This document shows positions 15,472 to 37,385 of a stretch of DNA of 64,000 bases, in pieces. The DNA is taken from the sequence record PQ471516.1. The stretch is one strand, 5' to 3'. The notes under the pieces were generated by a model. That model was given only the letters and a program-made list of their open reading frames with translations. It searched no databases and was not told the DNA's origin. Position numbers and translations under genes: made by a program. The stretch's first letter is position 1; each line of letters opens with the position of its first letter.

Positions 15472-15690
15472 ATGAAATTATCTAAAATCGAAAAGAAAAC
15501 TATTGATGAAGCAGTTAAGCACGGTTATACATTTCGTAATGATTCACATTTTACCAATTTTCAACAAGGGTATCGTACTATTAAAAAACTTATTGACAAA
15601 GGTTTATTAGTTGAAGTCAATAACGGGAACGGTATCGAGTATCAACCAACACAGGACGCATTTTATTTTAAGAAATATAATATTATCTAA
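15472..15690 (+). CDS. Hypothetical early protein
   Basis: Promoter 15415, RBS GGAG; start adjusted. Confidence 0.75.
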   Translation: MKLSKIEKKTIDEAVKHGYTFRNDSHFTNFQQGYRTIKKLIDKGLLVEVNNGNGIEYQPTQDAFYFKKYNII

Positions 15691-19997: not shown

Positions 19998-20207
19998 ATG
20001 TATTACACCGTATACAGTGTTCTAGGCACTATTGCAGGCGTACATGATAACGTCGATAGTGCTATGCGTACAGTACTGCAACAGGTTCCACTAAAGCCTA
20101 AGACCATTAAGCAGATGACAGCACGACTAACCAGGGCGACGGCTGGCGTGGAAGTATGGCAGGACTATGGGGATACACAGATAATCGTAAGCGTAACGAA
20201 GGATTAA
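19998..20207 (+). CDS. Hypothetical protein
   Basis: RBS AGGAG. Confidence 0.75.
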   Translation: MYYTVYSVLGTIAGVHDNVDSAMRTVLQQVPLKPKTIKQMTARLTRATAGVEVWQDYGDTQIIVSVTKD

Positions 20208-20353
20208 TGCGTAAAAGGATTTAGTACTGATGCATTTTAAATTTTATGCATTTTTTAAAAACTACGCAAAAAATAACGAAGGATTAATGCGTAAAAGGAT
20301 TTAGTACTGATGCATTTTAAATTTTATGCATTTTTTAAAAACTACGCAAAAAA
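20194..20353. repeat. Perfect 80-bp tandem duplication
   Basis: 20194-20273 is identical to 20274-20353. Confidence 0.95.
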
Positions 20354-20521
20354 ACTAAACCAATACCTTAGCGTTATAGTTTAGGGATTGGACTATGTTT
20401 TTATGCGTGGGGGGGCATGGTGCGGGTAACCTTAGCGACTTCGAGAAAGTTGCCATAGGGGTATTGACTTTTTATATGGAACGTGTAAAATCTGAATGAT
20501 ATAAATTATCAAGGAGTCCCC

Positions 20522-20752
20522 GTGAAAAACTTAAGTAAAGATGAATACGATGAGTTACTTATACGAACTGTTAATAAAGCCTTTGGAGCCGCTACACCGT
20601 TGATACGTTTGGATTACTTCCTTTCGGCTACTCTAGGAACTAACTATCAGGATTTTTGGATAGATAAGTATATTGCACAACTAAAAGAAGATATAACTTA
20701 CAAGGTAGTCAATTACACTATACAAAACGCTATTACTAAAGGTAACAAATGA
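20522..20752 (+). CDS. LGTxxQ-family protein
   Basis: TLGTNYQD; promoter TTGACT 20464, RBS AAGGAG, GTG start. Confidence 0.85.
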   Translation: MKNLSKDEYDELLIRTVNKAFGAATPLIRLDYFLSATLGTNYQDFWIDKYIAQLKEDITYKVVNYTIQNAITKGNK

Positions 20753-20976
20753 AAGTCATAACACAAACACAAGCGTATTCACTTATGCTGCTTTACATGG
20801 ATGACTTAACCAGTATCTCCCGTGACCTCAATCCTTTGATTAGGGGTCATCTGCAATGTGAGATTCGCATGTTGGCTGTACTGGGGACCAACTTTCAACT
20901 GGAGTACGTTGAAGAATATCTTTACGCACTGAAGAGGTATATTGCACATGAAGCACATCTCGCCGGACGAACATGA
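20749..20976 (+). CDS. LGTxxQ-family protein
   Basis: VLGTNFQL. Confidence 0.85.
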   Translation: MKVITQTQAYSLMLLYMDDLTSISRDLNPLIRGHLQCEIRMLAVLGTNFQLEYVEEYLYALKRYIAHEAHLAGRT

Positions 20977-21166
20977 AGAAATCATTAGAAAACTCACACA
21001 GCAAGCATTAAATCTGTATAACGATCCATCTAAAACATGGTATGAAAATAGAATCGCAGTGAGTGACTTATGGGTTCTGCACTTTATCGGGACACAGTAT
21101 CAAGAAAGGTATCTGGATCAATTGATTGGACATTTACTGCAAGGAATTATAATTAAATGCGAATGA
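20948..21166 (+). CDS. LGTxxQ-family protein
   Basis: FIGTQYQE. Confidence 0.85.
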   Translation: MKHISPDEHEEIIRKLTQQALNLYNDPSKTWYENRIAVSDLWVLHFIGTQYQERYLDQLIGHLLQGIIIKCE

Positions 21167-21405
21167 AAATCCTAAGCGAAGTAGAATTTTCTGAAAGAAT
21201 GAAACTAGGAAGAAACGCCAGATTAAAAGTCTACGATGAAGTGGGGTTAACTAACACACAAAGGGCCGTAAAGCGTGCGGAAATAACATTACCTTACTTC
21301 CTTGGGACGAACTATCAGGAAACGATGATTGAGAACTATATAAATGACCTTAAATTTCACATCCATGAAACATATAAAGGTGTACTGAATGAAAAAACTA
21401 AGTAA
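21163..21405 (+). CDS. LGTxxQ-family protein
   Basis: FLGTNYQE. Confidence 0.85.
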   Translation: MKILSEVEFSERMKLGRNARLKVYDEVGLTNTQRAVKRAEITLPYFLGTNYQETMIENYINDLKFHIHETYKGVLNEKTK

Positions 21406-21631
21406 TTACGATTACTTCAAACTATTGGACGGCATCAAAGGTGACATACGTTTAATTCATAAAACCGAAACCATTCCAAGGGACGATAGGATTATTATTG
21501 TATCAGAAATGAAACTCAAACTCCTTGTGGGAACCGATAGACAGAATATCGCGGTGGACTTACTTATATCATCCTTACGCAATAAGATATGGAACCAATA
21601 TAATGAAGACAATCGACATAAAGGAATTTAA
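21389..21631 (+). CDS. LGTxxQ-family protein
   Basis: LVGTDRQN. Confidence 0.85.
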   Translation: MKKLSNYDYFKLLDGIKGDIRLIHKTETIPRDDRIIIVSEMKLKLLVGTDRQNIAVDLLISSLRNKIWNQYNEDNRHKGI

Positions 21632-21830
21632 CATTAGACTGGCTCGAACTCGTGCACTAAGACAACAGATTTTCTACGATACAAACACACCACAAACCAA
21701 AAAGGATGTTGCAATATCAGAGATTAACATGTATAGTACCTTGGGAACGCAATACCAAGAGATGTACGTCCAAGAGCATGTACTGAACTTGAAAAAGGAA
21801 ATCCAACATGAAATACATCGATGCCGCTGA
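21603..21830 (+). CDS. LGTxxQ-family protein
   Basis: TLGTQYQE; start adjusted. Confidence 0.85.
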   Translation: MKTIDIKEFNIRLARTRALRQQIFYDTNTPQTKKDVAISEINMYSTLGTQYQEMYVQEHVLNLKKEIQHEIHRCR

Positions 21831-22047
21831 AAAACAACGTAGATTAATGGAATCGCTTAAAGCATGTAAAAAGATTTTCAATGACTATACGATTACACAT
21901 GAAGAACGAATGGTGCTAATCGCTGAAACCCGCGTTCTGGTTATGCTGGGAACATCTGAACAGGAAGGTGCAGTTGAAATCTTACTTAAGGAAATGCAAT
22001 TCCACTTAAAACGAAGAGACAAAGATGAAACACTTGACAAGCGATGA
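21808..22047 (+). CDS. LGTxxQ-family protein
   Basis: MLGTSEQE. Confidence 0.85.
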   Translation: MKYIDAAEKQRRLMESLKACKKIFNDYTITHEERMVLIAETRVLVMLGTSEQEGAVEILLKEMQFHLKRRDKDETLDKR

Positions 22048-22285
22048 ATTGAATGCTAAATTAAACCATGCTTTCACGTTAAGAACAAGAATTATGATGA
22101 ACAAGAATTACAGCATAAACGAAAAACGTATCCTCTGCGTAGAAGCTACTATGGGTGTACTGTTAGGAACTACCAAGCAAGAGCATCACGTTAATCTTGT
22201 TATCATGGAATTACTCCAGGAAATCAAAGGTAAAATCTATATTCAAAATATGAGAAAAGCTATCCACAGGAAGGATACTGTATGA
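22025..22285 (+). CDS. LGTxxQ-family protein
   Basis: LLGTTKQE. Confidence 0.85.
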   Translation: MKHLTSDELNAKLNHAFTLRTRIMMNKNYSINEKRILCVEATMGVLLGTTKQEHHVNLVIMELLQEIKGKIYIQNMRKAIHRKDTV

Positions 22286-22500
22286 AGATGTTGAGTCCTC
22301 TGGAATACATTTTAAAAATAAGCTCTACTAAACCAACCTATAATAACCTTTGTTCTACTCTGGACTTAACCAAAACAGAAAAAGATCTACTAAGGCGTGA
22401 TTTGGAGTTGGGTGTACTGTTAGGGACAAACTATCAAGAAAATTATGAAGTGTACTTTATCGAATCTTTAATCAGAGAAATAGAATGCAAAATGAAATGA
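22282..22500 (+). CDS. LGTxxQ-family protein
   Basis: LLGTNYQE. Confidence 0.85.
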   Translation: MKMLSPLEYILKISSTKPTYNNLCSTLDLTKTEKDLLRRDLELGVLLGTNYQENYEVYFIESLIREIECKMK

Positions 22501-22739
22501 TATACTTAACAAACGATGAACTAAAAGTAAGGCTCGTTAAATCCAGAAGAGATATCGATAACATACCAAAAGACCCTATGCAATCCCCAGCAGCAAGGAG
22601 TGCTGAAGTATTATATGCACAACTCTTGTACTTTCTAGGAACTGATATACAAGAACATTACGTTCAATCCTGGCTTAGATACACTAAATTTACTATTCAA
22701 GAAAAGATGCATGAACAAGAATTTCCTAAATCGGAGTAA
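22497..22739 (+). CDS. LGTxxQ-family protein
   Basis: FLGTDIQE. Confidence 0.85.
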   Translation: MIYLTNDELKVRLVKSRRDIDNIPKDPMQSPAARSAEVLYAQLLYFLGTDIQEHYVQSWLRYTKFTIQEKMHEQEFPKSE

Positions 22740-22743
22740 TAGA

Positions 22744-22968
22744 ATGCAAAGACCTAAACCACTAGGAACAGCAGAATACATTGAACTAATGGCAGTGAAT
22801 TTCTCTGCATTTAAGAAACTGCTACAAGAATCAAAGAATGATTTAGAGTATAAGATTAAGGGTTCTGATTTAAGATTGTTACTTACTTTAGGAACAGACA
22901 TTCAGGATAAATCTGTTCAAGAGCATATCAGAGCACTTACACATAGCATCTGGCATAAACATTCCTAA
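22744..22968 (+). CDS. LGTxxQ-family protein
   Basis: TLGTDIQD; RBS GGAG. Confidence 0.85.
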   Translation: MQRPKPLGTAEYIELMAVNFSAFKKLLQESKNDLEYKIKGSDLRLLLTLGTDIQDKSVQEHIRALTHSIWHKHS

Positions 22969-22982
22969 ATTGGAGAAATACA

Positions 22983-23210
22983 ATGCAAGCCCCAATCAAA
23001 ATTCTAACAACTAAAATGTATCACGATGGTTTAATGAAGAGATCTCAACAGCTACTGAATATTTCCTTAAGCGATAAAAGTGATGAAGAGATTGAAATGC
23101 TCAGACAGGAAGTCAGACTAGATATCACGATAGGCACTGATGCACAATCAGAATACCTTGGTTATTATATTGATTGTACTAAAGATTACATCAAGAGCCT
23201 ATGCCAATGA
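22983..23210 (+). CDS. LGTxxQ-family protein
   Basis: TIGTDAQS. Confidence 0.85.
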   Translation: MQAPIKILTTKMYHDGLMKRSQQLLNISLSDKSDEEIEMLRQEVRLDITIGTDAQSEYLGYYIDCTKDYIKSLCQ

Positions 23211-23215
23211 CATAT

Positions 23216-23250
23216 TAGTACTGAATACTTAGTACTTAGTACTGAATACT
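23216..23250. repeat. Short AGTACT-based tandem repeat
   Basis: TAGTACTGAATACT-TAGTACT-TAGTACTGAATACT. Confidence 0.85.
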
Positions 23251-23272
23251 AAATTTTAATTAGGAAAATAAA

Positions 23273-23641
23273 ATGAAAAACATTTGGGGAATTGATAGTA
23301 CTAGTACTAAACAAAATGATTTAGCACTTTCAGTAATTGGCGTTGAGTTTATTAATCTACAAGGAAAGACATTCTTTTTATCTTGTTCTTCTGATGATGA
23401 CGTTAATATGTGTTTTGAATTAGATAAACATAACATTTCTTTATCGTACATTAAAAGTGAAGGAACATTAGTATATAGAGTGTATGATACTGATAGTACT
23501 AATAATGAGAGTACTGATAGTACTGTTTATTACATCCACGATAATACAGAAATGATAGTAGATCAAAATGGAAATGAACACAATCTATTTGGTTTATCTT
23601 ATAAGGATAGTTCTTATTTAATTTCAAAGATTATGGAGTAA
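23273..23641 (+). CDS. Hypothetical protein interrupting the LGT array
   Basis: RBS AGGA; no LGT motif. Confidence 0.75.
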   Translation: MKNIWGIDSTSTKQNDLALSVIGVEFINLQGKTFFLSCSSDDDVNMCFELDKHNISLSYIKSEGTLVYRVYDTDSTNNESTDSTVYYIHDNTEMIVDQNGNEHNLFGLSYKDSSYLISKIME

Positions 23642-23644
23642 TTA

Positions 23645-23869
23645 ATGCACATAATAACACCAAAGGAACTATGGCGTAGGCTAGGACTAACTGCTACTAA
23701 CTCTAGTCCAATCAGGACTGACCCAAATCTGACAGTACTAGAGAAGCGTGTTTTAATGCATGAATTACAATTGCACAAAACCATAGGAACAAACTACCAG
23801 GAGCAGTTCGTGGGAATTTACCTCAAGAGTTTACAAGATTTAATTAAACAGAATAAAAGGACATTATGA
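23645..23869 (+). CDS. LGTxxQ-family protein
   Basis: TIGTNYQE; close paralogue of next gene. Confidence 0.85.
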   Translation: MHIITPKELWRRLGLTATNSSPIRTDPNLTVLEKRVLMHELQLHKTIGTNYQEQFVGIYLKSLQDLIKQNKRTL

Positions 23870-24105
23870 GCATCATCTCAATAAACCAAGATGAACTATT
23901 GCGTAGGATAGGACTAACAACTGCACGTGCTATTGCAATTCGTAATAATCCAAACTTTACAGTACTAGAAAAGTACGCTTTAATGTATGAAGTAAAATTG
24001 AATGCTATTTTAGGAACAAACTACCAAGAACTATTCATTGAAAGTTACTTAAGTGCATTAAAAGATTTAATTGAACATAATAAAAAGGAATATACCAGAA
24101 TATGA
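23866..24105 (+). CDS. LGTxxQ-family protein
   Basis: ILGTNYQE. Confidence 0.85.
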   Translation: MSIISINQDELLRRIGLTTARAIAIRNNPNFTVLEKYALMYEVKLNAILGTNYQELFIESYLSALKDLIEHNKKEYTRI

Positions 24106-24347
24106 GAATCATTACATCTCAAGAGTACAGAAACATTATGCTCAATACTATCCCTGATTGCAGGGCAATAGATAAACTAACCTTAAGACCTGATGAGCGA
24201 AAGTGCAAGTACTATGAACTTATGTACTTTAACTTACTAGGTACTAACTACCAGGAGCATCATATTAAAGCGTACTTAAATGTTTTAAAGGAAAGTACCG
24301 AATACCTTATTGAACAATCTAAGAAAGCTAAAAAGAGACAGAAATGA
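24102..24347 (+). CDS. LGTxxQ-family protein
   Basis: LLGTNYQE. Confidence 0.85.
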   Translation: MRIITSQEYRNIMLNTIPDCRAIDKLTLRPDERKCKYYELMYFNLLGTNYQEHHIKAYLNVLKESTEYLIEQSKKAKKRQK

Positions 24348-24604
24348 CAGCAATGAAAGAATTAAGACACGAAGATTACTTTACTTTTATTTCAAAGCAC
24401 AACCAACAGTACAAAGAATTTAAAGAGCAGAGTACTTCCCATTATGAGTACTGCGTATTAAGTACTGATTATACTTTAGGTTTTACAGTAGGAACTACAT
24501 TACAGGAATACTCTATTGGTTTGCACTTAAATGCATTAGAAAGATTAATTCAAAGTAAAGTCCTAGAACATGAACAAGAAAATAAAAATACTAACAAAAA
24601 GTGA
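24344..24604 (+). CDS. LGTxxQ-family protein
   Basis: TVGTTLQE. Confidence 0.85.
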   Translation: MTAMKELRHEDYFTFISKHNQQYKEFKEQSTSHYEYCVLSTDYTLGFTVGTTLQEYSIGLHLNALERLIQSKVLEHEQENKNTNKK

Positions 24605-24806
24605 ATACGCAGAAATCATTTTCAATTCTATACACAAGTACCAGTACTTAAAAGATAATTACGAATCGATAGAGTTAGAAGTTAAAAAAGCAGACTTAGA
24701 TGTATTAATAGCTTTAGGTACTAATTATCAAAAGTACAGTACTCCAAGATTAATAGAAGTATTACTACAAGAGGTCCAAAGTAAATGCAATGACAATAAC
24801 AATTAA
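24570..24806 (+). CDS. LGTxxQ-family protein
   Basis: ALGTNYQK. Confidence 0.85.
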   Translation: MNKKIKILTKSEYAEIIFNSIHKYQYLKDNYESIELEVKKADLDVLIALGTNYQKYSTPRLIEVLLQEVQSKCNDNNN

Positions 24807-25056
24807 TAAGAACATAGTAGTAATACAGTACATGAGTTCTGTGCAGTACAAAAATGAAATTGCTAAAATGCAGAGCAATAGTACAGAAGACCGTTCTAAG
24901 TACTTGTGGTTAGTACAATCCAGAGAAATCGTTTTAAATAAATTTATAGGGACAGATGCACAAGAGTATTGCTTAGAGCAGTACATTGAAGCGTTGATGA
25001 TGCACATCAGAGGTCTTAAGAAATTACGTTACAGTATTGACAGTACCAGAAAGTAG
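24790..25056 (+). CDS. LGTxxQ-family protein
   Basis: FIGTDAQE. Confidence 0.85.
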   Translation: MTITINKNIVVIQYMSSVQYKNEIAKMQSNSTEDRSKYLWLVQSREIVLNKFIGTDAQEYCLEQYIEALMMHIRGLKKLRYSIDSTRK

Positions 25057-25094
25057 TGCTATAGTACCTGTACGTTCAATAAAGGGTAGAGATT

Positions 25095-25331
25095 ATGATT
25101 AAATTAGCATTCGGTATTGTAGTACTGGCACTTGCAATCAGCTTAGGTCTAGCTGCACTAGAAGTTAATGAATTAGAAGAGATGCATTGCACAAAGACAG
25201 GACAGAGTAGAGTTGAAACGGTTATGATACCCGTGACGGTTATTGTGAATAACATGCCTATCACAAATCTGATTCCTACCCTAACGACAACGTACAAGTA
25301 CACTTGTGATGACGGAGAGCGATGGAGATAA
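25095..25331 (+). CDS. Membrane-anchored small protein
   Basis: N-terminal hydrophobic helix, two Cys; promoter TTGACA 25037-N17-TATAGT. Confidence 0.75.
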   Translation: MIKLAFGIVVLALAISLGLAALEVNELEEMHCTKTGQSRVETVMIPVTVIVNNMPITNLIPTLTTTYKYTCDDGERWR

Positions 25332-25570
25332 TGCATTACAAACATCTTCCAGAAATGGAATTCAGACGCATGTCCAAATCAATCAGACAAAAATACATTG
25401 CAACACAAAGGTACAACCTAAAGTACAAGCACAATATCCATGACGAACGATTGCTGTACGTAGTAGGGACCGAGTATCAGGATAGGGTTGTTAATTCATA
25501 TTTGTACGCCCTAAAAGAGTACATCCTATATCTTTGTAATAACACACAGCACATACAGGACATAAAATGA
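25331..25570 (+). CDS. LGTxxQ-family protein
   Basis: VVGTEYQD. Confidence 0.8.
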   Translation: MHYKHLPEMEFRRMSKSIRQKYIATQRYNLKYKHNIHDERLLYVVGTEYQDRVVNSYLYALKEYILYLCNNTQHIQDIK

Positions 25571-25887
25571 AATTTAATATCCTAAGAGTATCAAAAAGAG
25601 CGATTTATGCATATGAGTTTAATTATGATCAATTTGATGTAGATATCATTTTGTACAAGAACCGTGAAGGTGAAATGCTTTTTAAGTACCAAAATAGTGA
25701 AGCAGATAATATTCCTTTACCGGATTTAACCAAAATGCAAGAGGATGAATTCTTTCAGCAGAGCTTAGTATACGATATTGATTTTTATAGTATAGATATT
25801 CTTTTAGCTTTACAGAAAAAGATGCACGAAATCTTTAATGATTTAGCCCAAGGCGATGATAGTGCAAGGTTCGTATTCAATGTTTAG
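25567..25887 (+). CDS. FQ-motif family protein (short type)
   Basis: PDLT...EDEFFQQSLVYD. Confidence 0.85.
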   Translation: MKFNILRVSKRAIYAYEFNYDQFDVDIILYKNREGEMLFKYQNSEADNIPLPDLTKMQEDEFFQQSLVYDIDFYSIDILLALQKKMHEIFNDLAQGDDSARFVFNV

Positions 25888-26083
25888 AAACATAGATCCC
25901 AGTCAGTACGCAACCATGTACAGAGATTATTGGATGCAAAGTTCCAGTACCAAGTCCCTTGCGGAATTTCGTATGATATATTTTCTTGGTACAGAGAATC
26001 AAGAAGAAACGATGCTGGACTATCTTGAAGTACTAAAGGTTGAAGTACAAGATGAATACATATTAGGGGTTATAGAGCAGTGA
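25880..26083 (+). CDS. LGTxxQ-family protein
   Basis: FLGTENQE. Confidence 0.8.
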   Translation: MFRNIDPSQYATMYRDYWMQSSSTKSLAEFRMIYFLGTENQEETMLDYLEVLKVEVQDEYILGVIEQ

Positions 26084-26574
26084 AATCGAGATTCGTTTCA
26101 GAGTTCAGTACAGATGCGGTGTACGCTAAGGATTTAGTACAGTTATTAATTACATTGCTCAAGGCTAAGGATAATTCAGAAGTTCAAGATTTGTGTAGTT
26201 CTTGTATCCGAGATGCAGGTGGTAATTTGTATATTAAGATAGATGGATTAGAACGTCTTATATATAAACAATCAAAATTCATCCAAAGTTGGACATACCT
26301 TGATTTTGACAGTACATATTCAGCGTACACAAAAAGAAGTACAAAAACCTTTTTTACAATCCAGGGTAAAACGTATAATTTGTTAAAAGAGCCATTAACA
26401 GAAGAAATGTATTTCCAGATGCAATGCTTAGGATTAAGTACAGAAGCGTTAAATGCTTATGTGCTTATTGATGCTATGGAATATTTAGATTTAGATAAGT
26501 ACGTTCCAGACGGATGGAGAATGTCTTTACCTTCGTTATTTGCAGTGTACAATACAATACATGGGGAACCTTAA
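26080..26574 (+). CDS. FQ-motif family protein
   Basis: EEMYFQMQCL. Confidence 0.85.
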   Translation: MKSRFVSEFSTDAVYAKDLVQLLITLLKAKDNSEVQDLCSSCIRDAGGNLYIKIDGLERLIYKQSKFIQSWTYLDFDSTYSAYTKRSTKTFFTIQGKTYNLLKEPLTEEMYFQMQCLGLSTEALNAYVLIDAMEYLDLDKYVPDGWRMSLPSLFAVYNTIHGEP

Positions 26575-27085
26575 AGTGAATTTTAATGTAATTGATGTTC
26601 CTGAATTAGCAAAGAAGATTCAAACAATCCTGTACATAGGCAGTTCAATACGAAGTACAGGTGATTTCATCAGGACAGATAAAGTAAGAATGCAAGGTAT
26701 GCGTTCATCATATGATGTTAAAGGTATGTGCACATTTGATATGGTTTATACAAAATACGGAAAGGAAAAGAATGCAATATGTTTATTATCGTTTCCACCG
26801 AACCCTATAGCACCGAGAAATCCTAACAATACATTATGGTACGAGCAAGGTGCAGATACATTAGAGTTCAAGGGTACATTTTATGATGTAGAAGATATTC
26901 CAGCAACAGAAGAAGGAGCATTTCAGTACAGCCTATTGTATCCCGATGATGTAATATTTTATAAGAAGTTATTTTGGGAGTTAAACAATTTACCTCATTA
27001 CACCCCTAATTTTTCAATAGACCTTGAGTGCGTAGATACCGTATACGAAAGTTTAATGGAGTTCATTAGTTATGAAGTACAGTAA
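26561..27085 (+). CDS. FQ-motif family protein
   Basis: EEGAFQYSLLY. Confidence 0.85.
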   Translation: MGNLKVNFNVIDVPELAKKIQTILYIGSSIRSTGDFIRTDKVRMQGMRSSYDVKGMCTFDMVYTKYGKEKNAICLLSFPPNPIAPRNPNNTLWYEQGADTLEFKGTFYDVEDIPATEEGAFQYSLLYPDDVIFYKKLFWELNNLPHYTPNFSIDLECVDTVYESLMEFISYEVQ

Positions 27086-29504: not shown

Positions 29505-29692
29505 GCGAAAATCAGATACGTATAGTTGACAGGATGGTATCCCTGCATATCAGTCAGTACCTTTATGATTCCAGAAGAGGTGTTGATACATGGGACATTA
29601 CAATGCAATGCATCAGGCTTTTTTATACGGATTTTAACAATGGATTAAAGTGGCTCCAAGAGAGAAAAGATGAAAAAGTACACCAAAAATGA
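29498..29692 (+). CDS. Hypothetical protein
   Basis: Coupled to neighbours. Confidence 0.65.
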   Translation: MLSENQIRIVDRMVSLHISQYLYDSRRGVDTWDITMQCIRLFYTDFNNGLKWLQERKDEKVHQK

Positions 29693-29864
29693 GTTTATAG
29701 TAGAAATCCAGTTCGTATTTCAAAAGTGGAAAGCCTTGGGTTTAGAGAATTTTCCGTATCAGGATTTTAAATTATTATATTTTTGGGGTAGTAATATGCA
29801 GGACGCTGTATTAAAAGAGTACCTAAAAGAGATGCAGTACAAGATACAGTACAAGAAGGAATAG
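29670..29864 (+). CDS. LGTxxQ-family protein (divergent)
   Basis: YFWGSNMQD. Confidence 0.75.
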   Translation: MKKYTKNEFIVEIQFVFQKWKALGLENFPYQDFKLLYFWGSNMQDAVLKEYLKEMQYKIQYKKE

Positions 29865-30091: not shown

Positions 30092-30294
30092 AGAGAAGTG
30101 GCGGTTTTACAGGCCGATGTTTTAGGGGTCAAAAAAATTTCCGCTTTAACAAGGTGGAGATTATCTTTTATATATAGTGTTAGAATTGTGCATAAGCGTA
30201 GAAGGAATTTTCGAAAAAGAAAAAAGACGCGACGCAGCCACGATTCGGCCTGGAAATATATTTCTTTATCTTGTATTTTAATTTGGAGTTTATT

Positions 30295-30639
30295 ATGGAT
30301 TTTGATTATTCGGTTTACAGTATAAAGTACCATGATTCTTTTGAATTGTATTGTAATCTTGTAAAGGGTGATAGCAAGCACGATTGTGAGCAATTCCTGC
30401 GATACGATGGGAAACAATTTCATTTCTATGATTACTGCACTGGAGATAAAGAAGAAGTACCTGATTATACTGCACTGGATGATGCAGAACTATTTCAGGC
30501 TAGACTTGTATTTGATGCAAGATTAGTTTGTACTATTGAAGAGATGATTCCTATACAACAGGAATTAAAAGAACATTCCAAAAAGAAAGTCGAGTACGGA
30601 TATAATCATCGTTATCACTTTAATCTAGAGGATAAGTAA
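30295..30639 (+). CDS. FQ-motif family protein (short type)
   Basis: PDYTALDDAELFQARLVFD; RBS GGAG. Confidence 0.85.
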   Translation: MDFDYSVYSIKYHDSFELYCNLVKGDSKHDCEQFLRYDGKQFHFYDYCTGDKEEVPDYTALDDAELFQARLVFDARLVCTIEEMIPIQQELKEHSKKKVEYGYNHRYHFNLEDK

Positions 30640-31115
30640 TGAGTTTAGAAAGTGCATTAGAATTAGGTCGAAGGATAGTTCCTATTATTAATTTCTACCA
30701 AAAGAATTTATATAAGCTAGGATACTTCAATGATGAAATCCTGACTCCTGAAGAACTGGATTTGGGATACATGTGTATGTTAGCCTTTGGTCAGTATCAT
30801 ACTAGTGGTGATTGTGATGTGAATCTTAGTGGTGGATATCTTGATTTCGAGAGGAATAGTGCACTCCAATTCGTAGACAGAAATGGTTCAGTACAACGCA
30901 TTGAACCGGAAGAGTTTAAAGAATGTAGTACTATGACCGAGGATATGTATTTCCAGTTAAGTACTCTTTACAGTTCAGAGGCACTTGATGCAATGATACT
31001 TTTTGATTACTTATATGGCAGTGATGTTCCTAATTTTGTGTATCTAAGTCTTACTCGTTTGGATATTCTGGAAGAATTATATGAACAGGATTTATTAAAA
31101 CAGGTACATATATAA
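30639..31115 (+). CDS. FQ-motif family protein (long type)
   Basis: EDMYFQLSTLY. Confidence 0.85.
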   Translation: MSLESALELGRRIVPIINFYQKNLYKLGYFNDEILTPEELDLGYMCMLAFGQYHTSGDCDVNLSGGYLDFERNSALQFVDRNGSVQRIEPEEFKECSTMTEDMYFQLSTLYSSEALDAMILFDYLYGSDVPNFVYLSLTRLDILEELYEQDLLKQVHI

Positions 31116-31468
31116 TGGAATTTGAATTTGTAATATCGACACATTGTTTCAAGTTACAGCGTCAGTACTTTTGTAATTTAAACAAAGGTGATATGATACA
31201 TGCTGGGAATGAATATCTTCATTACAGTAGTGGTAAATTTACATTTGTTAATTACGATAATTATCTTTCTCCACACGAAGAGATGCTGGATTATACAGTA
31301 CTACCAGATGGTGAACTATTTCAGCAGTCCCTGGTATTTGATAAGAAGTACATTTGTTCTTTTGAGGAAGTTTGTGCTTTGCAGAAGATCATAAAAGAAT
31401 ACGATGAGAGTACTTCTGGGCGTGATATAATAATTAATGAATATAAGTTCAACCTAGAGGATATGTAA
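31115..31468 (+). CDS. FQ-motif family protein (short type)
   Basis: DYTVLPDGELFQQSLVFD. Confidence 0.85.
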   Translation: MEFEFVISTHCFKLQRQYFCNLNKGDMIHAGNEYLHYSSGKFTFVNYDNYLSPHEEMLDYTVLPDGELFQQSLVFDKKYICSFEEVCALQKIIKEYDESTSGRDIIINEYKFNLEDM

Positions 31469-31905
31469 TGAGTTTAGAAAGAGCATTAGAAATTGCTGAG
31501 TTGATTGATATGTGCAGAACTAAAATCAAAACTGACTGCCTCAATGGGTATCTATATCAGGAAGGCAATTCATATTACCGAATGTTATTTGATGAAAGTT
31601 CTGATAGTATTGAAATGTATGATGATAAGTTAGATACCAGATATACAGTTGAATGCGATGTTAGTTTAGAAGATAATTACATATTCTTTTGTAAGAACTC
31701 TAGTATTGCATTGAATTATAATGAGCTTCTCCCTTATTCAGTACTTGAAGGTAATTGGGGTAGTCCAGAATATTACTTCCAGCAAAGTACTATCTACAGT
31801 GAAGAAGTCCTTGATAAACTCGTCATTTTGTGGTACTTTAATAACACGAGTCCCAATAACTTCTACATGGACTTAGACATATTAGATGTAATGAAAGGGG
31901 GATAA
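31468..31905 (+). CDS. FQ-motif family protein (long type)
   Basis: PEYYFQQSTIY. Confidence 0.85.
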   Translation: MSLERALEIAELIDMCRTKIKTDCLNGYLYQEGNSYYRMLFDESSDSIEMYDDKLDTRYTVECDVSLEDNYIFFCKNSSIALNYNELLPYSVLEGNWGSPEYYFQQSTIYSEEVLDKLVILWYFNNTSPNNFYMDLDILDVMKGG

Positions 31906-31907
31906 AC

Positions 31908-32387
31908 GTGTCATTTGAAAGTGCCTTTATAGAAGCCCAACGAATCCATGAGTACATGATTCGTATTATTAATGATGATAATCCAAATATAACAAAGTAC
32001 TGTGATGCATCATGGACTGAGTACTACCTATGTACACCAGCACAAAAAAATTACATGTTGGATTCAAATACTCGTATTCTACATTTATGCCCTAATAGTA
32101 ATCACTTCTACTGTTGCAGTACAGCAGAGCACAGTACTATGGAGTTCAGTAGGAGTAGTCCTATTATTTTTTATAAATGGAATGTAGAGGGTTCTAACTA
32201 TACTGACTGTACACACCAGATAGATGCAGAAGTACTGGATGAGCCGTGGGATTCTTCTGATTATTATTTTCAGATGAGCACTGTGTACGAAGAAGATGTA
32301 CTTGACACTTTAGTACTGATGTGGTACTTTAAGCACAGAACAGATTATCCAGATTTCTATCTGGAGTACTACCACGACTTAGGCTAA
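31908..32387 (+). CDS. FQ-motif family protein (long type)
   Basis: SDYYFQMSTVY. Confidence 0.85.
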   Translation: MSFESAFIEAQRIHEYMIRIINDDNPNITKYCDASWTEYYLCTPAQKNYMLDSNTRILHLCPNSNHFYCCSTAEHSTMEFSRSSPIIFYKWNVEGSNYTDCTHQIDAEVLDEPWDSSDYYFQMSTVYEEDVLDTLVLMWYFKHRTDYPDFYLEYYHDLG

Positions 32388-32396
32388 GAGGATTAT

Positions 32397-32945
32397 ATGG
32401 ATTACACATTTAATGGTTTAGAGTACAGGCACTGTATTGCAATGGCTAAAGTACTGGAGTACGTTATGACCAGATTGCAATGCAATGAATTTCTTAAGCG
32501 AAATGACTTATATCTAAATTCCGATGGTTTCTTGTTTGCTGACAATGATGATATTGACTTTGATCGTTGCGTTCGTATTGGTAAAGAAACCATATCAAGA
32601 GCCGGATGTATGGGTGCAGTTCTTACGCATTGTATTTCTTTTTACCCAGATGGTCATACGATTCGTATTGTTCAAGGACATGAAAGCTCTTTTTCGTTTC
32701 AAGACAATCCAGATTTTGAATCGTTGTTCTTCCAGAACATTTTAGTACTTGAACCTATGAAAGTACTATATATCGTAGTGTTCAATTATTTGCACAACAT
32801 TAAATGCATAGATTCATTTGATATAGAAATGAGTCTTATGCGTATTATCAATCAAATACCTGAACTTCAGAGTATTACCGAAGAACCGTACTTCGACGAT
32901 TTCACAGAATTATATCGTATGCACCGCTTTGAAGGAGATGAATAA
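32397..32945 (+). CDS. FQ-motif family protein
   Basis: ESLFFQNILVL. Confidence 0.85.
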   Translation: MDYTFNGLEYRHCIAMAKVLEYVMTRLQCNEFLKRNDLYLNSDGFLFADNDDIDFDRCVRIGKETISRAGCMGAVLTHCISFYPDGHTIRIVQGHESSFSFQDNPDFESLFFQNILVLEPMKVLYIVVFNYLHNIKCIDSFDIEMSLMRIINQIPELQSITEEPYFDDFTELYRMHRFEGDE

Positions 32946-33427
32946 TGTCATTTAACGGAGCACTTGAAAAAGCTAATACTATTTTCGAGTACTATAAACT
33001 ATTTCGTAATGGTGACTTGGATGAACTTTTTCATTACAGCGATGATTCTGATTCATACTATCATAACAATAGTGATGGTAAGACATGGATAGTATACAGT
33101 ACTAGTGTATCACATGAAACTATTGAGTACTGCTGCAATCCAGACAGGGAATATATCATGTACAGTCATAATTCTGAATATATTAAACTTGAATTATGGA
33201 CACCTGATGAGTGGACTTACAAGAAGACAACCGCCGATGGTGATGAGTTAAATGCAATGTACCAAGATTGGTTATCAGAAGATTATTACTTCCAGCAAAA
33301 TACTTTGCACAAGGAAATGTATCTTGATGCTATGGTAGTTCTTTCTTATCTTCGTTCTAAGAATTTAAGTCCTTTTTATTTGAATTTAGGTTATCTTGAA
33401 GAAATCAAGAAGTCAATGCAGGGGTAA
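32945..33427 (+). CDS. FQ-motif family protein (long type)
   Basis: EDYYFQQNTLH. Confidence 0.85.
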   Translation: MSFNGALEKANTIFEYYKLFRNGDLDELFHYSDDSDSYYHNNSDGKTWIVYSTSVSHETIEYCCNPDREYIMYSHNSEYIKLELWTPDEWTYKKTTADGDELNAMYQDWLSEDYYFQQNTLHKEMYLDAMVVLSYLRSKNLSPFYLNLGYLEEIKKSMQG

Positions 33428-33430
33428 TCA

Positions 33431-33778
33431 ATGAAAACTGAAATAGATGTAACTAACTTTTCGTACAACGGTACACTGTATTGTATTTTTAAACTCAATA
33501 ACAAAGATGTATCAATTCGTGCTCTTTATAATATTTGTACTACCGAAACTGAATACGATTTGTACATAGTTAAAGATGAACGTGGTGAGCGTGGTAGGAT
33601 TCCTAATTACGCTGAATGTTCATACAGGGATGAATATGAAGCTTTTATGTTCCAGGAATCCTTAGTATGGGAGAAGGATGTTGATTTCTTCTTAGTAAAA
33701 GAAATCCAAGAGTACTTCCAAAGTAATTACAAGAAGTTTATAAATGATGATTCCAAATTTACTTTAATACTAGGATAA
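33431..33778 (+). CDS. FQ-motif family protein (short type)
   Basis: EAFMFQESLVW. Confidence 0.85.
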   Translation: MKTEIDVTNFSYNGTLYCIFKLNNKDVSIRALYNICTTETEYDLYIVKDERGERGRIPNYAECSYRDEYEAFMFQESLVWEKDVDFFLVKEIQEYFQSNYKKFINDDSKFTLILG

Positions 33779-33781
33779 TTT

Positions 33782-34162
33782 ATGACATTCGAAGATTCAC
33801 AAAGAATTGTAAGTAAATGTATGGAATTAATAAAAGAAGATAATGATATATCATATAGTCCTGAGAAAAATGAATTCAAGATAGATGGTGCTTTTTGTTA
33901 CAATCCGCATTGGGATAAAAAAATCACATTCTTCTCAAAAGAGGGTTATAAAACAGATTATCCCCTAGAGCCAGAGCACGATCCTAGTACTGAAGAAGGT
34001 TTCTTTCAGTTGAGTTTACTTTACAATGATGATATAGTCCTGATGTATGCAATATTCGATGCGTTTCAAAAGAGCGATTACGAAGAAATTTTCTTCCCTA
34101 ATTATCGTTTTCATGTTGAACTAACTGGGATGGTGAAATGCAAAATCAAAGTGGAGGAATAG
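33782..34162 (+). CDS. FQ-motif family protein
   Basis: EEGFFQLSLLY. Confidence 0.85.
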   Translation: MTFEDSQRIVSKCMELIKEDNDISYSPEKNEFKIDGAFCYNPHWDKKITFFSKEGYKTDYPLEPEHDPSTEEGFFQLSLLYNDDIVLMYAIFDAFQKSDYEEIFFPNYRFHVELTGMVKCKIKVEE

Positions 34163-34163
34163 T

Positions 34164-34475
34164 GTGACACACGATGAATATAAAAGAGTCTGTACCGTGC
34201 AGAGTTCACTCCTTGATATAACTAAGGAGGATGCTGCATATGCACTTGTTTGTAAGAATATTCTTTCTGATTACCAAGATTTCTTTACAAAGAAATACAC
34301 TGGGCGTTCTGTTTTGTTCACGGTGTACTTGCTAGGAGAAGACCAAATCCAAGAAATGAAAATAAACGGGTACTGTATAAATTTACATGCGGTATTCTTC
34401 AGAGTAGGTAAAAACGGTTCTATCACCTACGCTGCCAGATGTTTCAGTACTGGATACGTTGAATTACTCCCATAG
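34164..34475 (+). CDS. Hypothetical protein
   Basis: RBS GGAGG, GTG start; no family motif. Confidence 0.75.
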   Translation: MTHDEYKRVCTVQSSLLDITKEDAAYALVCKNILSDYQDFFTKKYTGRSVLFTVYLLGEDQIQEMKINGYCINLHAVFFRVGKNGSITYAARCFSTGYVELLP

Positions 34476-34521
34476 TATTGACACTTGGGAGTTTTGTGCT
34501 ATAATATTTTTAGAGGTACTT

Positions 34522-34833
34522 ATGACAACATATACAGTTGAGGTTAGCAGTTACGGGACGTACACGTACAGGGCAGGTGTAGTAGGTAAATTCGATCAGA
34601 TCCTTGCATACGATGCATTTGAAGATTTCTGGTACATTCCATATCCTAATGAACGCAAATACGCTGATATCAGTGAAATCTTTAAGATGAATGAAGAAGA
34701 GTTGTTTCAATTCTCATTAGTATGGGAACATAAAATCCCTATGGAAGTCGTTATTGCACTGAATCCTATCATCATGAATTTGGTGCTAAATTGTGAAACG
34801 CCCCGCAACATGAAGATTACATTTGAGGTGTAA
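34522..34833 (+). CDS. FQ-motif family protein (short type)
   Basis: EEELFQFSLVW; promoter TTGACA 34478-N16-TATAAT. Confidence 0.85.
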   Translation: MTTYTVEVSSYGTYTYRAGVVGKFDQILAYDAFEDFWYIPYPNERKYADISEIFKMNEEELFQFSLVWEHKIPMEVVIALNPIIMNLVLNCETPRNMKITFEV

Positions 34834-35298
34834 ATGATTAATTTAGAGAATAGCAGGACTTTAGCGAATAAGGTTATTACAATTGTTCAGTACTACCATA
34901 CAAACAGGCATCTTCTTACTGAGAATGTTCTGGTAGTTAGCAGGAGTGAAGATTTCGATGTAGATGCCTTAAAGGTATGTGAATGTATATCTGAAGATAA
35001 TTTAACAGAATACAGTGCTCGTTATCAGTACATGTGCTACAATAAGATGAGACGCTTACACATTTCGAGTGACATGTACCCAACTAAAGATGAATTCGAA
35101 GAATTTGATATCACCAAAGATGAGTGCATGTATGCCTGTACTGAAGAAGGTTTCTTTCAATTAGAGACAATGTATTACCCTGAAGTTGTTGAAATTATTG
35201 CAGCTTTTGGTTTCATTTATAATAGCGATATTAACGTTGACTTCTATCTGGACTTAGATTATCTGGATTATCTTTATGCTGAGGCTACTAAAAAATGA
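34834..35298 (+). CDS. FQ-motif family protein (long type)
   Basis: EEGFFQLETMY. Confidence 0.85.
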   Translation: MINLENSRTLANKVITIVQYYHTNRHLLTENVLVVSRSEDFDVDALKVCECISEDNLTEYSARYQYMCYNKMRRLHISSDMYPTKDEFEEFDITKDECMYACTEEGFFQLETMYYPEVVEIIAAFGFIYNSDINVDFYLDLDYLDYLYAEATKK

Positions 35299-35831
35299 AC
35301 ATTAATATTAACAATCCAGAATCACTTGAGTACTTTTATTCTTTTATTACTAAAGCAATTCCTTTGATTAAACGATCATTTCTTGAAGGTACTGAAGATA
35401 AACTTCTGAATTCTAAGTACACTATTGATGGATCAGTCCAGGAAAAATCTTCAGCGTTTCAGTCATGTGAAGTGCGTAATGTATTTTGTAAAAGTGAAGT
35501 TCCTGTTATCATTGGGACAAGTGTGTCTAATTCTTTTATGACAGTAGATGATGATGGTAAAATTCTACGTTTCGAGTACACAAGAAAAAGTAATGTCTTT
35601 GAGTTATTCACTAATACAAAATACAAGTTCAGTTCTTCATGTAACGCATTTCTTATTCCTGAATATAATTACACTGAATTTGAAGAACAATGTTTCCAGT
35701 TGCGTTGTACTGATGAGAACTGTGAACTAATGATTTTCTTAATGAAACTAAGAATGGTTATGAATAATACATTTGCAATGTACTTACCGTTCTTAAAAGT
35801 AAATGAAGTATTCAATGAAGGTGTACTGTGA
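35295..35831 (+). CDS. FQ-motif family protein
   Basis: EEQCFQLRC. Confidence 0.8.
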   Translation: MNININNPESLEYFYSFITKAIPLIKRSFLEGTEDKLLNSKYTIDGSVQEKSSAFQSCEVRNVFCKSEVPVIIGTSVSNSFMTVDDDGKILRFEYTRKSNVFELFTNTKYKFSSSCNAFLIPEYNYTEFEEQCFQLRCTDENCELMIFLMKLRMVMNNTFAMYLPFLKVNEVFNEGVL

Positions 35832-36037
35832 GTAAAATAAAGTACATCAATGATGATTACATTATGAAGAACGCTATTAAGTACTTCAGTAATTCTGCCA
35901 ATCAGGGTGACAATCTTAAGATGGTGGAGATTCGTGTACTCATATACTTAGGAACACAACACCAGGAAAAATTGATTGCAGAATATCTTGATTCACTGAA
36001 GAGGCATGTAGAGAAAATTTATTATGGAATACAATGA
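35828..36037 (+). CDS. LGTxxQ-family protein
   Basis: YLGTQHQE. Confidence 0.8.
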   Translation: MSKIKYINDDYIMKNAIKYFSNSANQGDNLKMVEIRVLIYLGTQHQEKLIAEYLDSLKRHVEKIYYGIQ

Positions 36038-36524
36038 AGTTTTGAAGTTATACGAAGATATTTGTACTGCCATTAAAGTTGTGGAACTTGATACAAAGAA
36101 TCCAAATCCCAAGTTACATACACAAATAGTTAGTCCAGTAGCTTCCTTCCGTAAGATATTAATAAAATCAGACTACGAGTTGGAACACTTAATGTTTGTA
36201 CACGATGAGAAGTTGACTAATATTGTACCGAACTCTCATTTCGAACAAGCGATGCATACGTTCATGTCATTCCACAAGGACAGTACTAAAATCATGTTAC
36301 ACAGTGATATATACACTGAGTATGATATTGTTCCTGTAGAATTAAATGCTGACAGTTATTTTCAGTACAGTTTTGTGTACGACGAGACGCTACTGATGAT
36401 GCAGTTTCTTTCTAATCTATACATGCAGAATAATGACCTTCCGAACTTCATTAAGATTAATATTTCATATCTCAAGATGCCACAGTACTTAAAGATTAAG
36501 GAATACTACAGTGATTTACTCTGA
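36024..36524 (+). CDS. FQ-motif family protein
   Basis: ADSYFQYSFVY. Confidence 0.85.
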   Translation: MEYNEVLKLYEDICTAIKVVELDTKNPNPKLHTQIVSPVASFRKILIKSDYELEHLMFVHDEKLTNIVPNSHFEQAMHTFMSFHKDSTKIMLHSDIYTEYDIVPVELNADSYFQYSFVYDETLLMMQFLSNLYMQNNDLPNFIKINISYLKMPQYLKIKEYYSDLL

Positions 36525-37384: not shown

Positions 37385-37385
37385 T

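What the first reader, a model, noticed from the sequence alone, without database searches (positions are those of the whole stretch)
20522..26083. Tandem array of about 20 tiny helical paralogues sharing only LGTxxQ
Seen: 18 nearly contiguous, translationally coupled 70-90 aa ORFs (20522-25056) plus 25331, 25880, 29670 and 35828. All carry phi-(L/I/V)-G-T-x-x-Q-(E/D) at about two-thirds of their length, followed by an amphipathic helix (Y(L/I)..LK). The rest has diverged beyond obvious DNA similarity, yet all frames are intact. Inference: long-maintained diversification of one small scaffold, such as a panel of inhibitors or decoys for variable host defence proteins, or subunits of a hetero-polymer.
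Basis: partly seen in the sequence, partly recalled or inferred. Interest (0 to 1): 0.8.

Follow-up and report, generated by a model that had tools for sequence, protein, structure and literature searches.

The report
Tandem small-protein gene family, jumbo coliphage
A giant E. coli phage carries 22 copies of one tiny helical protein gene, 18 of them packed in a row just inside its terminal repeat; the family is real and kept by selection, is known only from RaK2-like giant phages, and has no known function.

Summary
The window is bases 1-64000 of Escherichia phage Turkey5, a 351-kb Asteriusvirus. Each member is recognised by a profile built from the other 21 (E 2e-7 to 8e-20); shuffled copies score E >= 1.3.

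The family is PHROG 4148, function unknown. AlphaFold gives a confident small helical fold (pLDDT 96). That fold has no significant match in the PDB, and in BFVD it matches only its own family.

The array starts about 100-250 bp after the ~20.4-kb direct terminal repeat. A sigma70-type promoter sits just upstream and is conserved in four phages.

Members are under purifying selection (dN/dS 0.27-0.37). Most duplications are old: 18 of 22 members match a fEgEco12 gene better than any paralogue in their own genome. Copy number varies from 21 to 31. Surface charge is diversified (pI 4.2-10). None is in the published phAPEC6 virion proteome.

Relatives occur only in Asteriusvirus phages and, scattered in smaller clusters, in Klebsiella phage RaK2 and its relatives.

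Best reading, which is inferred: early, non-virion intracellular binders built on one scaffold, acting in host takeover or counter-defence. Function is untested.

The parts
20196..20352 (+). Two near-identical ~77-bp tandem copies at the point where similarity to the 20,993-bp direct terminal repeat of fEgEco12 ends. Probably the inner boundary of the left terminal repeat.
   Evidence: Direct reading of the sequence. Identity to fEgEco12 falls from about 96% to 71% at 20258-20520. The repeat length in fEgEco12 comes from PMC13070987.
20464..20491 (+). Sigma70-type promoter (TTGACT-16-TAAAAT), 30 nt upstream of the first member.
   Evidence: The promoter, the leader gggtaaccttagcgacttcga and the ribosome-binding site ggagtccc occupy the same position in Turkey5, JNE01, fEgEco12 and phAPEC6.
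20522..20752 (+). Member 1 (76 aa, GTG start).
   Evidence: PHROG 4148 E 6e-13.
20749..20976 (+). Member 2 (75 aa).
20942..21166 (+). Member 3 (72-74 aa; the ATG at 20948 fits the family N-terminus). Not annotated in GenBank.
21157..21405 (+). Member 4 (82 aa). This is the protein that was modelled.
   Evidence: AlphaFold pLDDT 96.6; PHROG 4148 E 1e-17.
21389..21631 (+). Member 5 (80 aa).
21603..21830 (+). Member 6 (75 aa from the internal ATG). Not annotated in GenBank.
21808..22047 (+). Member 7 (79 aa).
22025..22285 (+). Member 8 (86 aa).
22282..22500 (+). Member 9 (72 aa). Missing from the closest relative, JNE01, because of a 173-bp difference.
22485..22739 (+). Member 10 (84 aa). 66% identical to a fEgEco12 orthologue.
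22744..22968 (+). Member 11 (74 aa). 79% identical to a fEgEco12 orthologue.
22983..23210 (+). Member 12 (75 aa).
23273..23641 (+). Non-member ORF (122 aa) that interrupts the array. No family match.
23645..23869 (+). Member 13 (74 aa). Recent duplicate of member 14 (52% aa, 71% nt).
23866..24105 (+). Member 14 (79 aa).
24102..24347 (+). Member 15 (81 aa).
24344..24604 (+). Member 16 (86 aa).
24570..24806 (+). Member 17 (78 aa). Not annotated in GenBank.
24832..25056 (+). Member 18 (74 aa; the ORF is open from 24790).
25037..25065 (+). Strong sigma70-type promoter (TTGACA-17-TATAGT with an extended -10 TG) that ends the 18-gene run.
25095..25331 (+). Non-member (78 aa) with a hydrophobic N-terminal segment. 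PHROG 8826, function unknown.
25322..25570 (+). Member 19 (82 aa).
25567..25887 (+). Non-member (106 aa). PHROG 13866, function unknown.
25856..26083 (+). Member 20 (67-75 aa; the most acidic member, pI 4.2).
29670..29864 (+). Scattered member 21 (64 aa, with GS in place of GT).
   Evidence: E 1.4e-8 against a profile that did not include it; AlphaFold pLDDT 96.0.
35828..36037 (+). Scattered member 22 (69 aa).
   Evidence: E 1.6e-11 against a profile that did not include it.

Best explanation
The array is a genuine multigene family (PHROG 4148) of small, soluble, mostly helical proteins of about 75 aa.

Shown:
- The genome has 22 intact paralogues, 18 of them in one tightly packed run.
- That run begins immediately inside the left ~20.4-kb direct terminal repeat of an Asteriusvirus jumbo phage.
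- A conserved host-type (sigma70) promoter precedes the run.
- Each paralogue is old and under purifying selection.
- The set gains and loses members between phages.
- The proteins are absent from a published virion proteome of a related phage (phAPEC6).

Inferred:
- The run is one early operon read by host RNA polymerase.
- The conserved positions build the fold and do not form a shared active site. These are MK-x-L at the N-terminus, L-G-T-x-x-Q before the last helix, and the V/Y/I/L/I stripe of the last helix. In the model a one-residue beta-bridge links residue 4 to the T of LGT, stapling the N-terminus to the start of the last helix.
- Everything else, meaning the exposed helix faces and the C-terminal tails, has diversified.
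- The most likely job is therefore a panel of early intracellular binders. Each would grip a different host protein (or a protein of a competing phage) to shut it off or redirect it. That makes the role host takeover or counter-defence.

No target is known.
For: - Family is real and separates cleanly from noise.
- PHROG 4148 hits for all ten members tested, E 3.6e-6 to 1e-17.
- One confident fold for a typical and an outlier member (pLDDT 96.6 and 96.0).
- Beta-bridge between residue 4 and residue 51 in the DSSP string.
- Conserved profile positions are mostly hydrophobic with i, i+3, i+4, i+7, i+11 spacing in the last helix.
- pI 4.2-10.0, negative GRAVY in all but one member (20749-20976, +0.04), no hydrophobic segments.
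- dN/dS 0.27 (Turkey5 vs JNE01; neighbouring genes 0.22) and 0.37 (fEgEco12 vs phAPEC6).
- Old, roughly collinear orthologues at 32-79% aa identity, plus recent duplicates.
- Copy number 22, 21, 31, >= 29 and >= 17 in five genomes.
- One member is missing in JNE01, which is 96.5% identical over the array.
- Array starts right after the terminal repeat.
- Promoter conserved in four phages.
- 18 near-consensus sigma70 promoters lie in the preceding 19 kb, which marks an early region.
- No terminator-like site on the + strand inside the run.
- No array gene (gp467c-489c) among the 62 phAPEC6 virion proteins.
- Genes from 20.5 to 45 kb are only 22-59% identical to fEgEco12, against 96% in the terminal repeat. 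The array therefore opens a fast-evolving accessory region.
Against: - There is no functional evidence of any kind: no homologue of known function, no target, no expression data for any Asteriusvirus.
- Whole-gene dN/dS is well below 1, so no arms-race signal is seen at this resolution.
- Recent amino-acid changes are spread over the protein and are only mildly depleted at conserved sites (5 observed against 10 expected).
- Early timing rests on promoter-like sequence only.
- The virion proteome is from a different species of the genus, and mass spectrometry can miss 9-kDa proteins.
- The structural role assigned to LGTxxQ rests on a DSSP string, not on inspected coordinates.
Confidence: 0.45

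Rival explanations
1. Adaptor family. The conserved polar residues (K2, E8, E39, T48, Q51 of the profile) form one shared docking site for a common partner, such as host RNA polymerase, a protease or a phage enzyme. The variable faces would bring in different substrates.
For: A few polar positions are as conserved as the hydrophobic core. Some relatives carry extra C-terminal modules, as expected of a modular domain: a 269-aa protein in phage UB, and 117-135-aa proteins in RaK2 and in metagenome locus L004.
Against: It cannot be tested here whether those residues cluster on the surface. They may just as well be caps and salt bridges of the fold. No partner is known.
Confidence: 0.15
2. Small nucleic-acid-binding regulators with a degenerate helix-turn-helix. 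They would tune phage or host transcription, each paralogue with its own site.
For: Weak Cro/C1-type hits exist: Pfam HTH_26 at E 0.05-0.07 for members 23645 and 23866, and the HipB antitoxin model at E 0.065 for one member. Helix 1-G-helix 2 of some members reads like a helix-turn-helix. Median pI is 8.5.
Against: All these hits are far below the curated cut-offs. The glycine between helices 1 and 2 is not conserved in the family. Foldseek finds no helix-turn-helix protein at E < 1 among 350,542 PDB chains for either model. Sequence searches of the PDB find none either. There is no similarity to the annotated regulator at 15472-15690. Several members are acidic, down to pI 4.2.
Confidence: 0.1
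3. Subunits of a hetero-oligomer or polymer, either a virion or inner-body component or an intracellular scaffold.
For: Tight packing and overlapping stops and starts suggest co-ordinated, roughly equal expression. All members share one fold.
Against: None is among the 62 phAPEC6 virion proteins, although a 4.7-kDa protein was detected there. Copy number ranges from 21 to 31 and differs between near-identical phages. In RaK2 the members are scattered in groups of one to three. Charge is very heterogeneous.
Confidence: 0.05
4. Largely dispensable birth-and-death gene family. Duplication next to the terminal repeat would create copies faster than they are lost, and each copy would have little or no individual function.
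For: Copy number is variable. The whole 20.5-45 kb region turns over fast. Synonymous divergence between adjacent orthologues ranges from 0.0 to 0.74, showing frequent recombination.
Against: All frames are intact in every genome examined. dN/dS of 0.27-0.37 is similar to neighbouring genes. Most paralogues predate the split of Turkey5 from the 121Q-like phages and stay roughly collinear. The family also persists in Klebsiella phages.
Confidence: 0.1

Closest known systems
PHROG 4148 (automatically clustered phage protein family, function unknown)
   Same: All ten members tested match over nearly the full 74-position profile, at E 3.6e-6 to 1e-17. This is the same family.
   Different: The PHROG entry carries no function, structure or genomic description. 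The tandem organisation, its position next to the terminal repeat and the copy-number variation were not found in the papers read for phAPEC6, fEgEco12, Sharanji, JP4, CBB and RaK2, or in the Iyer et al. jumbo-phage review.
Host-takeover module in the terminal redundancy of Bacillus phage SPO1, and the pre-early genes in the terminal repeat of coliphage T5 (from my own knowledge)
   Same: Many small genes of unknown fold sit at the genome end that carries a long direct terminal repeat. They are driven by strong host-type promoters and are thought to act first in infection. Window 1-20.2 kb has just this look, and the array follows directly.
   Different: Those modules consist of unrelated genes, each with its own promoter. 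Here a single family is repeated about 20 times in one packed run, outside the repeat itself. Early timing is not measured here.
Terminal multigene families of large eukaryotic DNA viruses, such as African swine fever virus MGF110/360/505 and poxvirus ankyrin or Bcl-2-like families (from my own knowledge); and the ~35-copy zinc-ribbon expansion in Bacillus phage G (PMC7824862)
   Same: All are lineage-specific expansions of one small scaffold near a genome end. Copy number varies between strains, paralogues have diverged and each copy is under purifying selection.
   Different: There is no sequence or fold relationship. In the eukaryotic viruses a role in immune evasion or host range has been demonstrated. 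Here it is only inferred.
Polymorphic internal proteins of T-even phages, such as IPI, which inhibits the GmrSD restriction enzyme (from my own knowledge)
   Same: A variable set of small proteins shares only a short conserved motif, and at least one member is a counter-defence protein.
   Different: The T-even proteins are packaged and injected, and their shared motif is a capsid-targeting and cleavage signal. The proteins here are absent from the phAPEC6 virion proteome, and their motif is internal.

Membership tests
PHROG 4148 | Significant full-length match to the family profile | tested here: met
   Ten of ten members tested match, E 3.6e-6 to 1.1e-17. Nine of the ten cover most of the 74-position profile.
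Cro/C1-type helix-turn-helix (Pfam HTH_26, PF13443) | Score above the Pfam gathering threshold (22 bits) | tested here: not met
   Best scores are 14.2 and 13.9 bits, for two of ten members only.
Cro/C1-type helix-turn-helix (Pfam HTH_26, PF13443) | Fold similarity to solved helix-turn-helix domains | tested here: not met
   Foldseek against the PDB gives a best E of 1.2 with TM <= 0.52 for model 1, and only two hits at E > 6 for model 2. No helix-turn-helix protein scores below E 8.
Known anti-phage defence proteins (PADLOC-DB 2.0) | Consistent match of the family to one model | tested here: not met
   Only two single-member hits, both at low score: 24570-24803 to a cyclase model (18.1 bits, E 4e-4) and 21808-22044 to an E1-E2 model (14.8 bits).
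Virion structural or internal proteins | Detection in purified particles | tested here: not met
   The phAPEC6 array genes are gp467c-489c. None is in Table 1 of PMC7247149, which lists 62 virion proteins. This is indirect, because it comes from another species of the same genus.
Anti-defence or host-takeover proteins (a functional class) | Demonstrated inhibition of a host system, or binding to a host target | not testable with these tools
Early genes | Transcription in the first minutes of infection | not testable with these tools
   There is only a conserved sigma70-type promoter upstream and an early-type neighbourhood. No Asteriusvirus transcriptome was found.

The most novel reading that the evidence does not exclude
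The array could be a phage counterpart of the terminal multigene families of poxviruses and African swine fever virus. It would be a previously unrecognised small helical scaffold, expanded to 20-30 copies. Each copy would neutralise a different host defence or host factor, so the set of copies a phage carries would help decide which E. coli or Salmonella strains it can grow on.
Probability: 0.3. Interest if true: 0.8.

Novelty: new member of a known kind. Interest (0 to 1): 0.5.

Why it matters
Over 80% of Asteriusvirus genes have no known function, and these phages are being isolated repeatedly as therapy candidates.

This family takes up about 5 kb of the genome. It is easy to recognise, has a confident predicted fold with no solved relative, and varies in content between otherwise close phages.

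If the members are target-specific binders, the array would be a ready-made library of 20-30 natural inhibitors per phage, roughly 90 sequence clusters in all. It could also be a determinant of host range. If they are not, the family is still a clean case for studying how a phage builds and keeps a large tandem gene family next to its terminal repeat.

Tried and rejected
- Pfam, NCBIfam and PADLOC gave no consistent hit. The two PADLOC hits, to a CBASS cyclase model and an E1-E2 model, are single members at 15-18 bits and I treat them as chance.
- The profile search of PDB sequences returned only interferon omega at E 0.028, which is chance. A single-member search returned nothing.
- Foldseek of both models against the PDB found nothing at E < 1. 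Foldseek of model 1 against BFVD found only the family's own members in slurp01, UB, 121Q and PBECO4.
- I first concluded the family was restricted to the genus, because tblastn with the profile consensus found only the 36 Asteriusvirus-type records. A DNA-pattern scan of IMG/VR then turned up Klebsiella phage RaK2. A profile scan of 43 kb of RaK2 found 12 members at E < 0.001, so I withdrew the genus restriction.
- The search for related loci could not use the alignment because it has no conserved stretch long enough.
- I looked for a functional clue in fused domains. The extra parts of the 269-aa UB protein, and of the 117-135-aa RaK2 and L004 proteins, match nothing.
- A profile comparison with the annotated transcriptional regulator at 15472-15690 showed no relation.
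- Mapping recent amino-acid changes onto the fold showed no strong clustering.
- Literature searches found no description of this family.


Full report
**Source of the window.** It is identical to bases 1-64000 of Escherichia phage Turkey5 (PQ471516.1, 351,311 bp). Its closest relative is vB_EcoM_JNE01, 96.5% identical over 20000-27000, which is classified in the genus Asteriusvirus. All annotated genes in the first 45 kb lie on the + strand, and all but four are labelled 'hypothetical protein'.

- The ORF list shows the run of 70-90-aa ORFs at the stated coordinates, and every one has G-[TS]-x-x-Q at 0.51-0.73 of its length.
- A profile built from the 20 ORFs between 20522 and 26083 was searched against all 614 six-frame ORFs of at least 40 aa in the window. 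It returns 22 hits at E <= 1.4e-8 and nothing else better than E 0.5. Two of the hits, 29670 and 35828, were not in the seed.
- In leave-one-out tests each member is recognised by the other 21 (E 2e-7 to 8e-20), while a shuffled copy of each scores E >= 1.3.
- In the 22-sequence alignment G and Q are invariant, T is nearly so, and pairwise identity to the first member is 19-30%.
- DNA similarity between members survives only in one pair (23653-23858 vs 23880-24085, 71%) and in the ~20 nt that encode LGTNYQE.
- Twelve of the 17 gene junctions between 20522 and 25056 overlap by 4-35 nt.
- Three ORFs inside the region are not members: 23273-23641, 25095-25331 and 25567-25887.
- The GenBank record misses three members and truncates others.

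**What the proteins look like.**
- AlphaFold2 with only the 22 paralogues as alignment gives a very confident model for 21157-21402 (pLDDT 96.6, pTM 0.81). It has a one-residue strand at position 4, helices 8-17, 19-26 and 33-48, a one-residue strand at T51 of LGT, then a long helix 54-81.
- The weakest member, 29670-29861, modelled with a 38-sequence alignment, also folds confidently (pLDDT 96.0) into a shortened version with three helices. Because both models rest on family alignments, they show compatibility with one fold and are not independent proof.
- In a profile of 162 family sequences the most conserved positions are M1, K2, L4, E8, Y9, E39, L42, L46, G47, T48, Q51, V55, Y58, I59, L62 and I66. 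Those in the last helix follow the i, i+3, i+4, i+7, i+11 spacing of one buried face.
- I therefore read LGTxxQ as a fold-building element: a turn whose T pairs with the N-terminal strand, followed by the first turn of the last helix. This is inference from the DSSP string, because coordinates could not be inspected.
- The proteins are hydrophilic, have no hydrophobic segments, and range in pI from 4.2 to 10.0.

**Relatives of known function.** None were found.
- Pfam gives nothing above threshold; the best are HTH_26 at 14 bits for two members.
- NCBIfam and PADLOC give only isolated weak hits.
- PDB sequence searches give nothing.
- Foldseek of either model against 350,542 PDB chains gives nothing at E < 1.
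- All ten members tested match PHROG 4148, a family of unknown function.

**Distribution.**
- An exhaustive HMMER search of 1.84 billion representative proteins finds only 90 clusters at E <= 0.001. All but two are 44-95 aa long, and 96 of the 101 retrieved sequences carry the motif.
- The clusters that could be traced come from Escherichia phages or from metagenomic contigs, some of 100-357 kb.
- tblastn with the family consensus against 50,697 phage records finds 36 records, 32 Escherichia and 4 Salmonella, the same number and host breakdown as the nucleotide search of the region.
- A degenerate DNA pattern for GTNYQE...Y, scanned over IMG/VR, found 121Q and also a 345,809-bp contig identical to Klebsiella phage RaK2.
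- A profile scan of 43 kb of RaK2 finds 12 members at E < 0.001, in groups of one to three. Two of them have an extra C-terminal module of about 55 aa.
- The family is therefore shared by at least two genera of RaK2-like jumbo phages, Asteriusvirus and Alcyoneusvirus. The long uninterrupted array was seen only in the Asteriusvirus-type genomes examined. GAP32 and CBB were not scanned with a profile.

**Genomic setting.**
- fEgEco12 has an experimentally confirmed 20,993-bp direct terminal repeat, and its record starts at the physical left end (PMC13070987).
- Window 1-20258 aligns to that repeat at 86-98% nucleotide identity. Identity collapses between 20258 and 20520, where Turkey5 has two tandem ~77-bp copies.
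- In fEgEco12 the first family member starts about 60-100 bp after the end of the repeat.
- Proteins encoded in 1-20.2 kb have a median 96% identity to fEgEco12. From 20.5 to 45 kb the collinear genes are only 22-59% identical, or have no match at all.
- Beyond about 42-52 kb nucleotide similarity to other Asteriusviruses returns, at about 80%. The array therefore opens a fast-evolving accessory region of about 25 kb that also holds other small paralogue families.
- The terminal repeat region looks like an early region. It has about 55 small genes separated by ~90-nt spacers, and 18 promoters within one mismatch of TTGACA-N16-18-TATAAT on the + strand. The minus strand of the whole window has only 4.
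- A 10-of-12 sigma70-type promoter lies 30 nt before the first member. Together with its leader and ribosome-binding site it is conserved in Turkey5, JNE01, fEgEco12 and phAPEC6, although the coding sequence downstream is not.
- No terminator-like site on the + strand lies inside the run. A strong promoter follows the 18th member.

**Evolution.**
- Between Turkey5 and JNE01 the pooled dN/dS of members is 0.27; for 41 neighbouring genes it is 0.22. Only one 3-nt gap occurs, in one member.
- JNE01 lacks most of member 22282-22500.
- Between fEgEco12 and phAPEC6, 26 collinear orthologue pairs give a pooled dN/dS of 0.37. Synonymous divergence ranges from 0.0 to 0.74 between adjacent genes, which points to gene-by-gene recombination. 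Five members have no clear orthologue.
- For 18 of 22 Turkey5 members the best match in fEgEco12 scores higher than the best paralogue within Turkey5, in roughly collinear order and at 32-79% identity. Members 23645 and 23866 are a recent duplicate pair at 52% identity.
- Copy numbers are 22 (window), 21 (JNE01 locus), 31 (fEgEco12 locus), at least 29 (phAPEC6, in 10 kb), at least 21 (121Q locus) and at least 17 (a more distant metagenomic phage with the same layout).
- The picture is an old expansion that is maintained by purifying selection and remodelled by duplication, loss and recombination.

**Function.** Nothing is shown directly.
- The published virion proteome of phAPEC6 lists 62 proteins, one as small as 4.7 kDa, and none of gp467c-489c.
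- Four features fit a set of early intracellular proteins that use one scaffold to bind different targets: the early-type promoter, absence from the virion, diversified charge, and position at the head of a fast-evolving accessory region next to the terminal repeat.
- I commit to that reading at about 0.45, with host takeover or counter-defence as the likely purpose.
- The rivals are an adaptor with a shared docking site (0.15), small nucleic-acid-binding regulators (0.10), a largely dispensable birth-and-death family (0.10) and a hetero-polymer (0.05).

**Comparison with what is known.**
- By membership, the family is PHROG 4148 and nothing else that I could test.
- By analogy, it resembles the host-takeover genes in the SPO1 terminal redundancy and the T5 pre-early genes. 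As a tandem expansion of one scaffold near a genome end, it also resembles the multigene families of African swine fever virus and poxviruses, and the ~35-copy zinc-ribbon expansion noted in phage G (PMC7824862).
- The RaK2 and CBB papers mention that paralogues are common but do not describe this family. The phAPEC6, fEgEco12, Sharanji and JP4 papers do not mention it.

**Verdict.** The feature is real and well defined, and I found no description of it in the papers searched. It is a new example of a known kind of thing, a lineage-specific multigene family in a jumbo phage. Its predicted fold has no solved relative, and its function is unknown but readily testable. Interest 0.5.

Noticed in passing
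window 20196-20352: Two near-identical tandem copies of a ~77-bp AT-rich unit sit exactly where similarity to the fEgEco12 direct terminal repeat stops. They may mark the inner repeat boundary or a packaging or recombination site.
   Followed up: partly
window 1-20258: About 55 small, mostly monocistronic genes are separated by ~90-nt spacers that resemble each other. They carry 18 near-consensus sigma70 promoters. Their proteins have a median 96% identity to fEgEco12, although the rest of the genome is only about 80% identical or unalignable. The terminal repeat seems to be exchanged or swept between species.
   Followed up: partly
window 26080-48000: The tightly packed genes after the array encode 110-200-aa proteins of unknown function that are only 22-59% identical to their collinear fEgEco12 counterparts. 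They include two further four-member paralogue families (30202-38587).
   Followed up: partly
L002 (fEgEco12) and L006 (phAPEC6) arrays: Synonymous divergence between adjacent orthologous array genes ranges from 0.0 to 0.74. This indicates a mosaic of segments with different histories, that is, frequent recombination inside the array.
   Followed up: partly
P0095 (phage UB, 269 aa); L022 7690-8097 and 11373-11723 (RaK2); L004 14156-14554: Some relatives are fused to extra C-terminal parts. The two RaK2 extensions are weakly related to each other (E 0.004-0.01). None of the extensions matches any known family.
   Followed up: partly
window 25037-25331: A strong promoter is followed by a 78-aa ORF with a hydrophobic N-terminal segment (PHROG 8826, function unknown). 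The ORF is conserved at 59% identity in fEgEco12. It is a likely membrane or exported protein embedded between array members.
   Followed up: no
window 24570-24803 and 21808-22044: Single weak PADLOC hits link one member to a CBASS-type oligonucleotide cyclase model (18 bits, E 4e-4) and another to an E1-E2 (Cap2-like) model (15 bits, E 1.8e-3). They are probably chance, but both models belong to the same defence system.
   Followed up: partly
window 20942-21166, 21603-21830, 24570-24806: Three family members are not annotated in GenBank record PQ471516.1, and several others are annotated with late start codons.
   Followed up: yes
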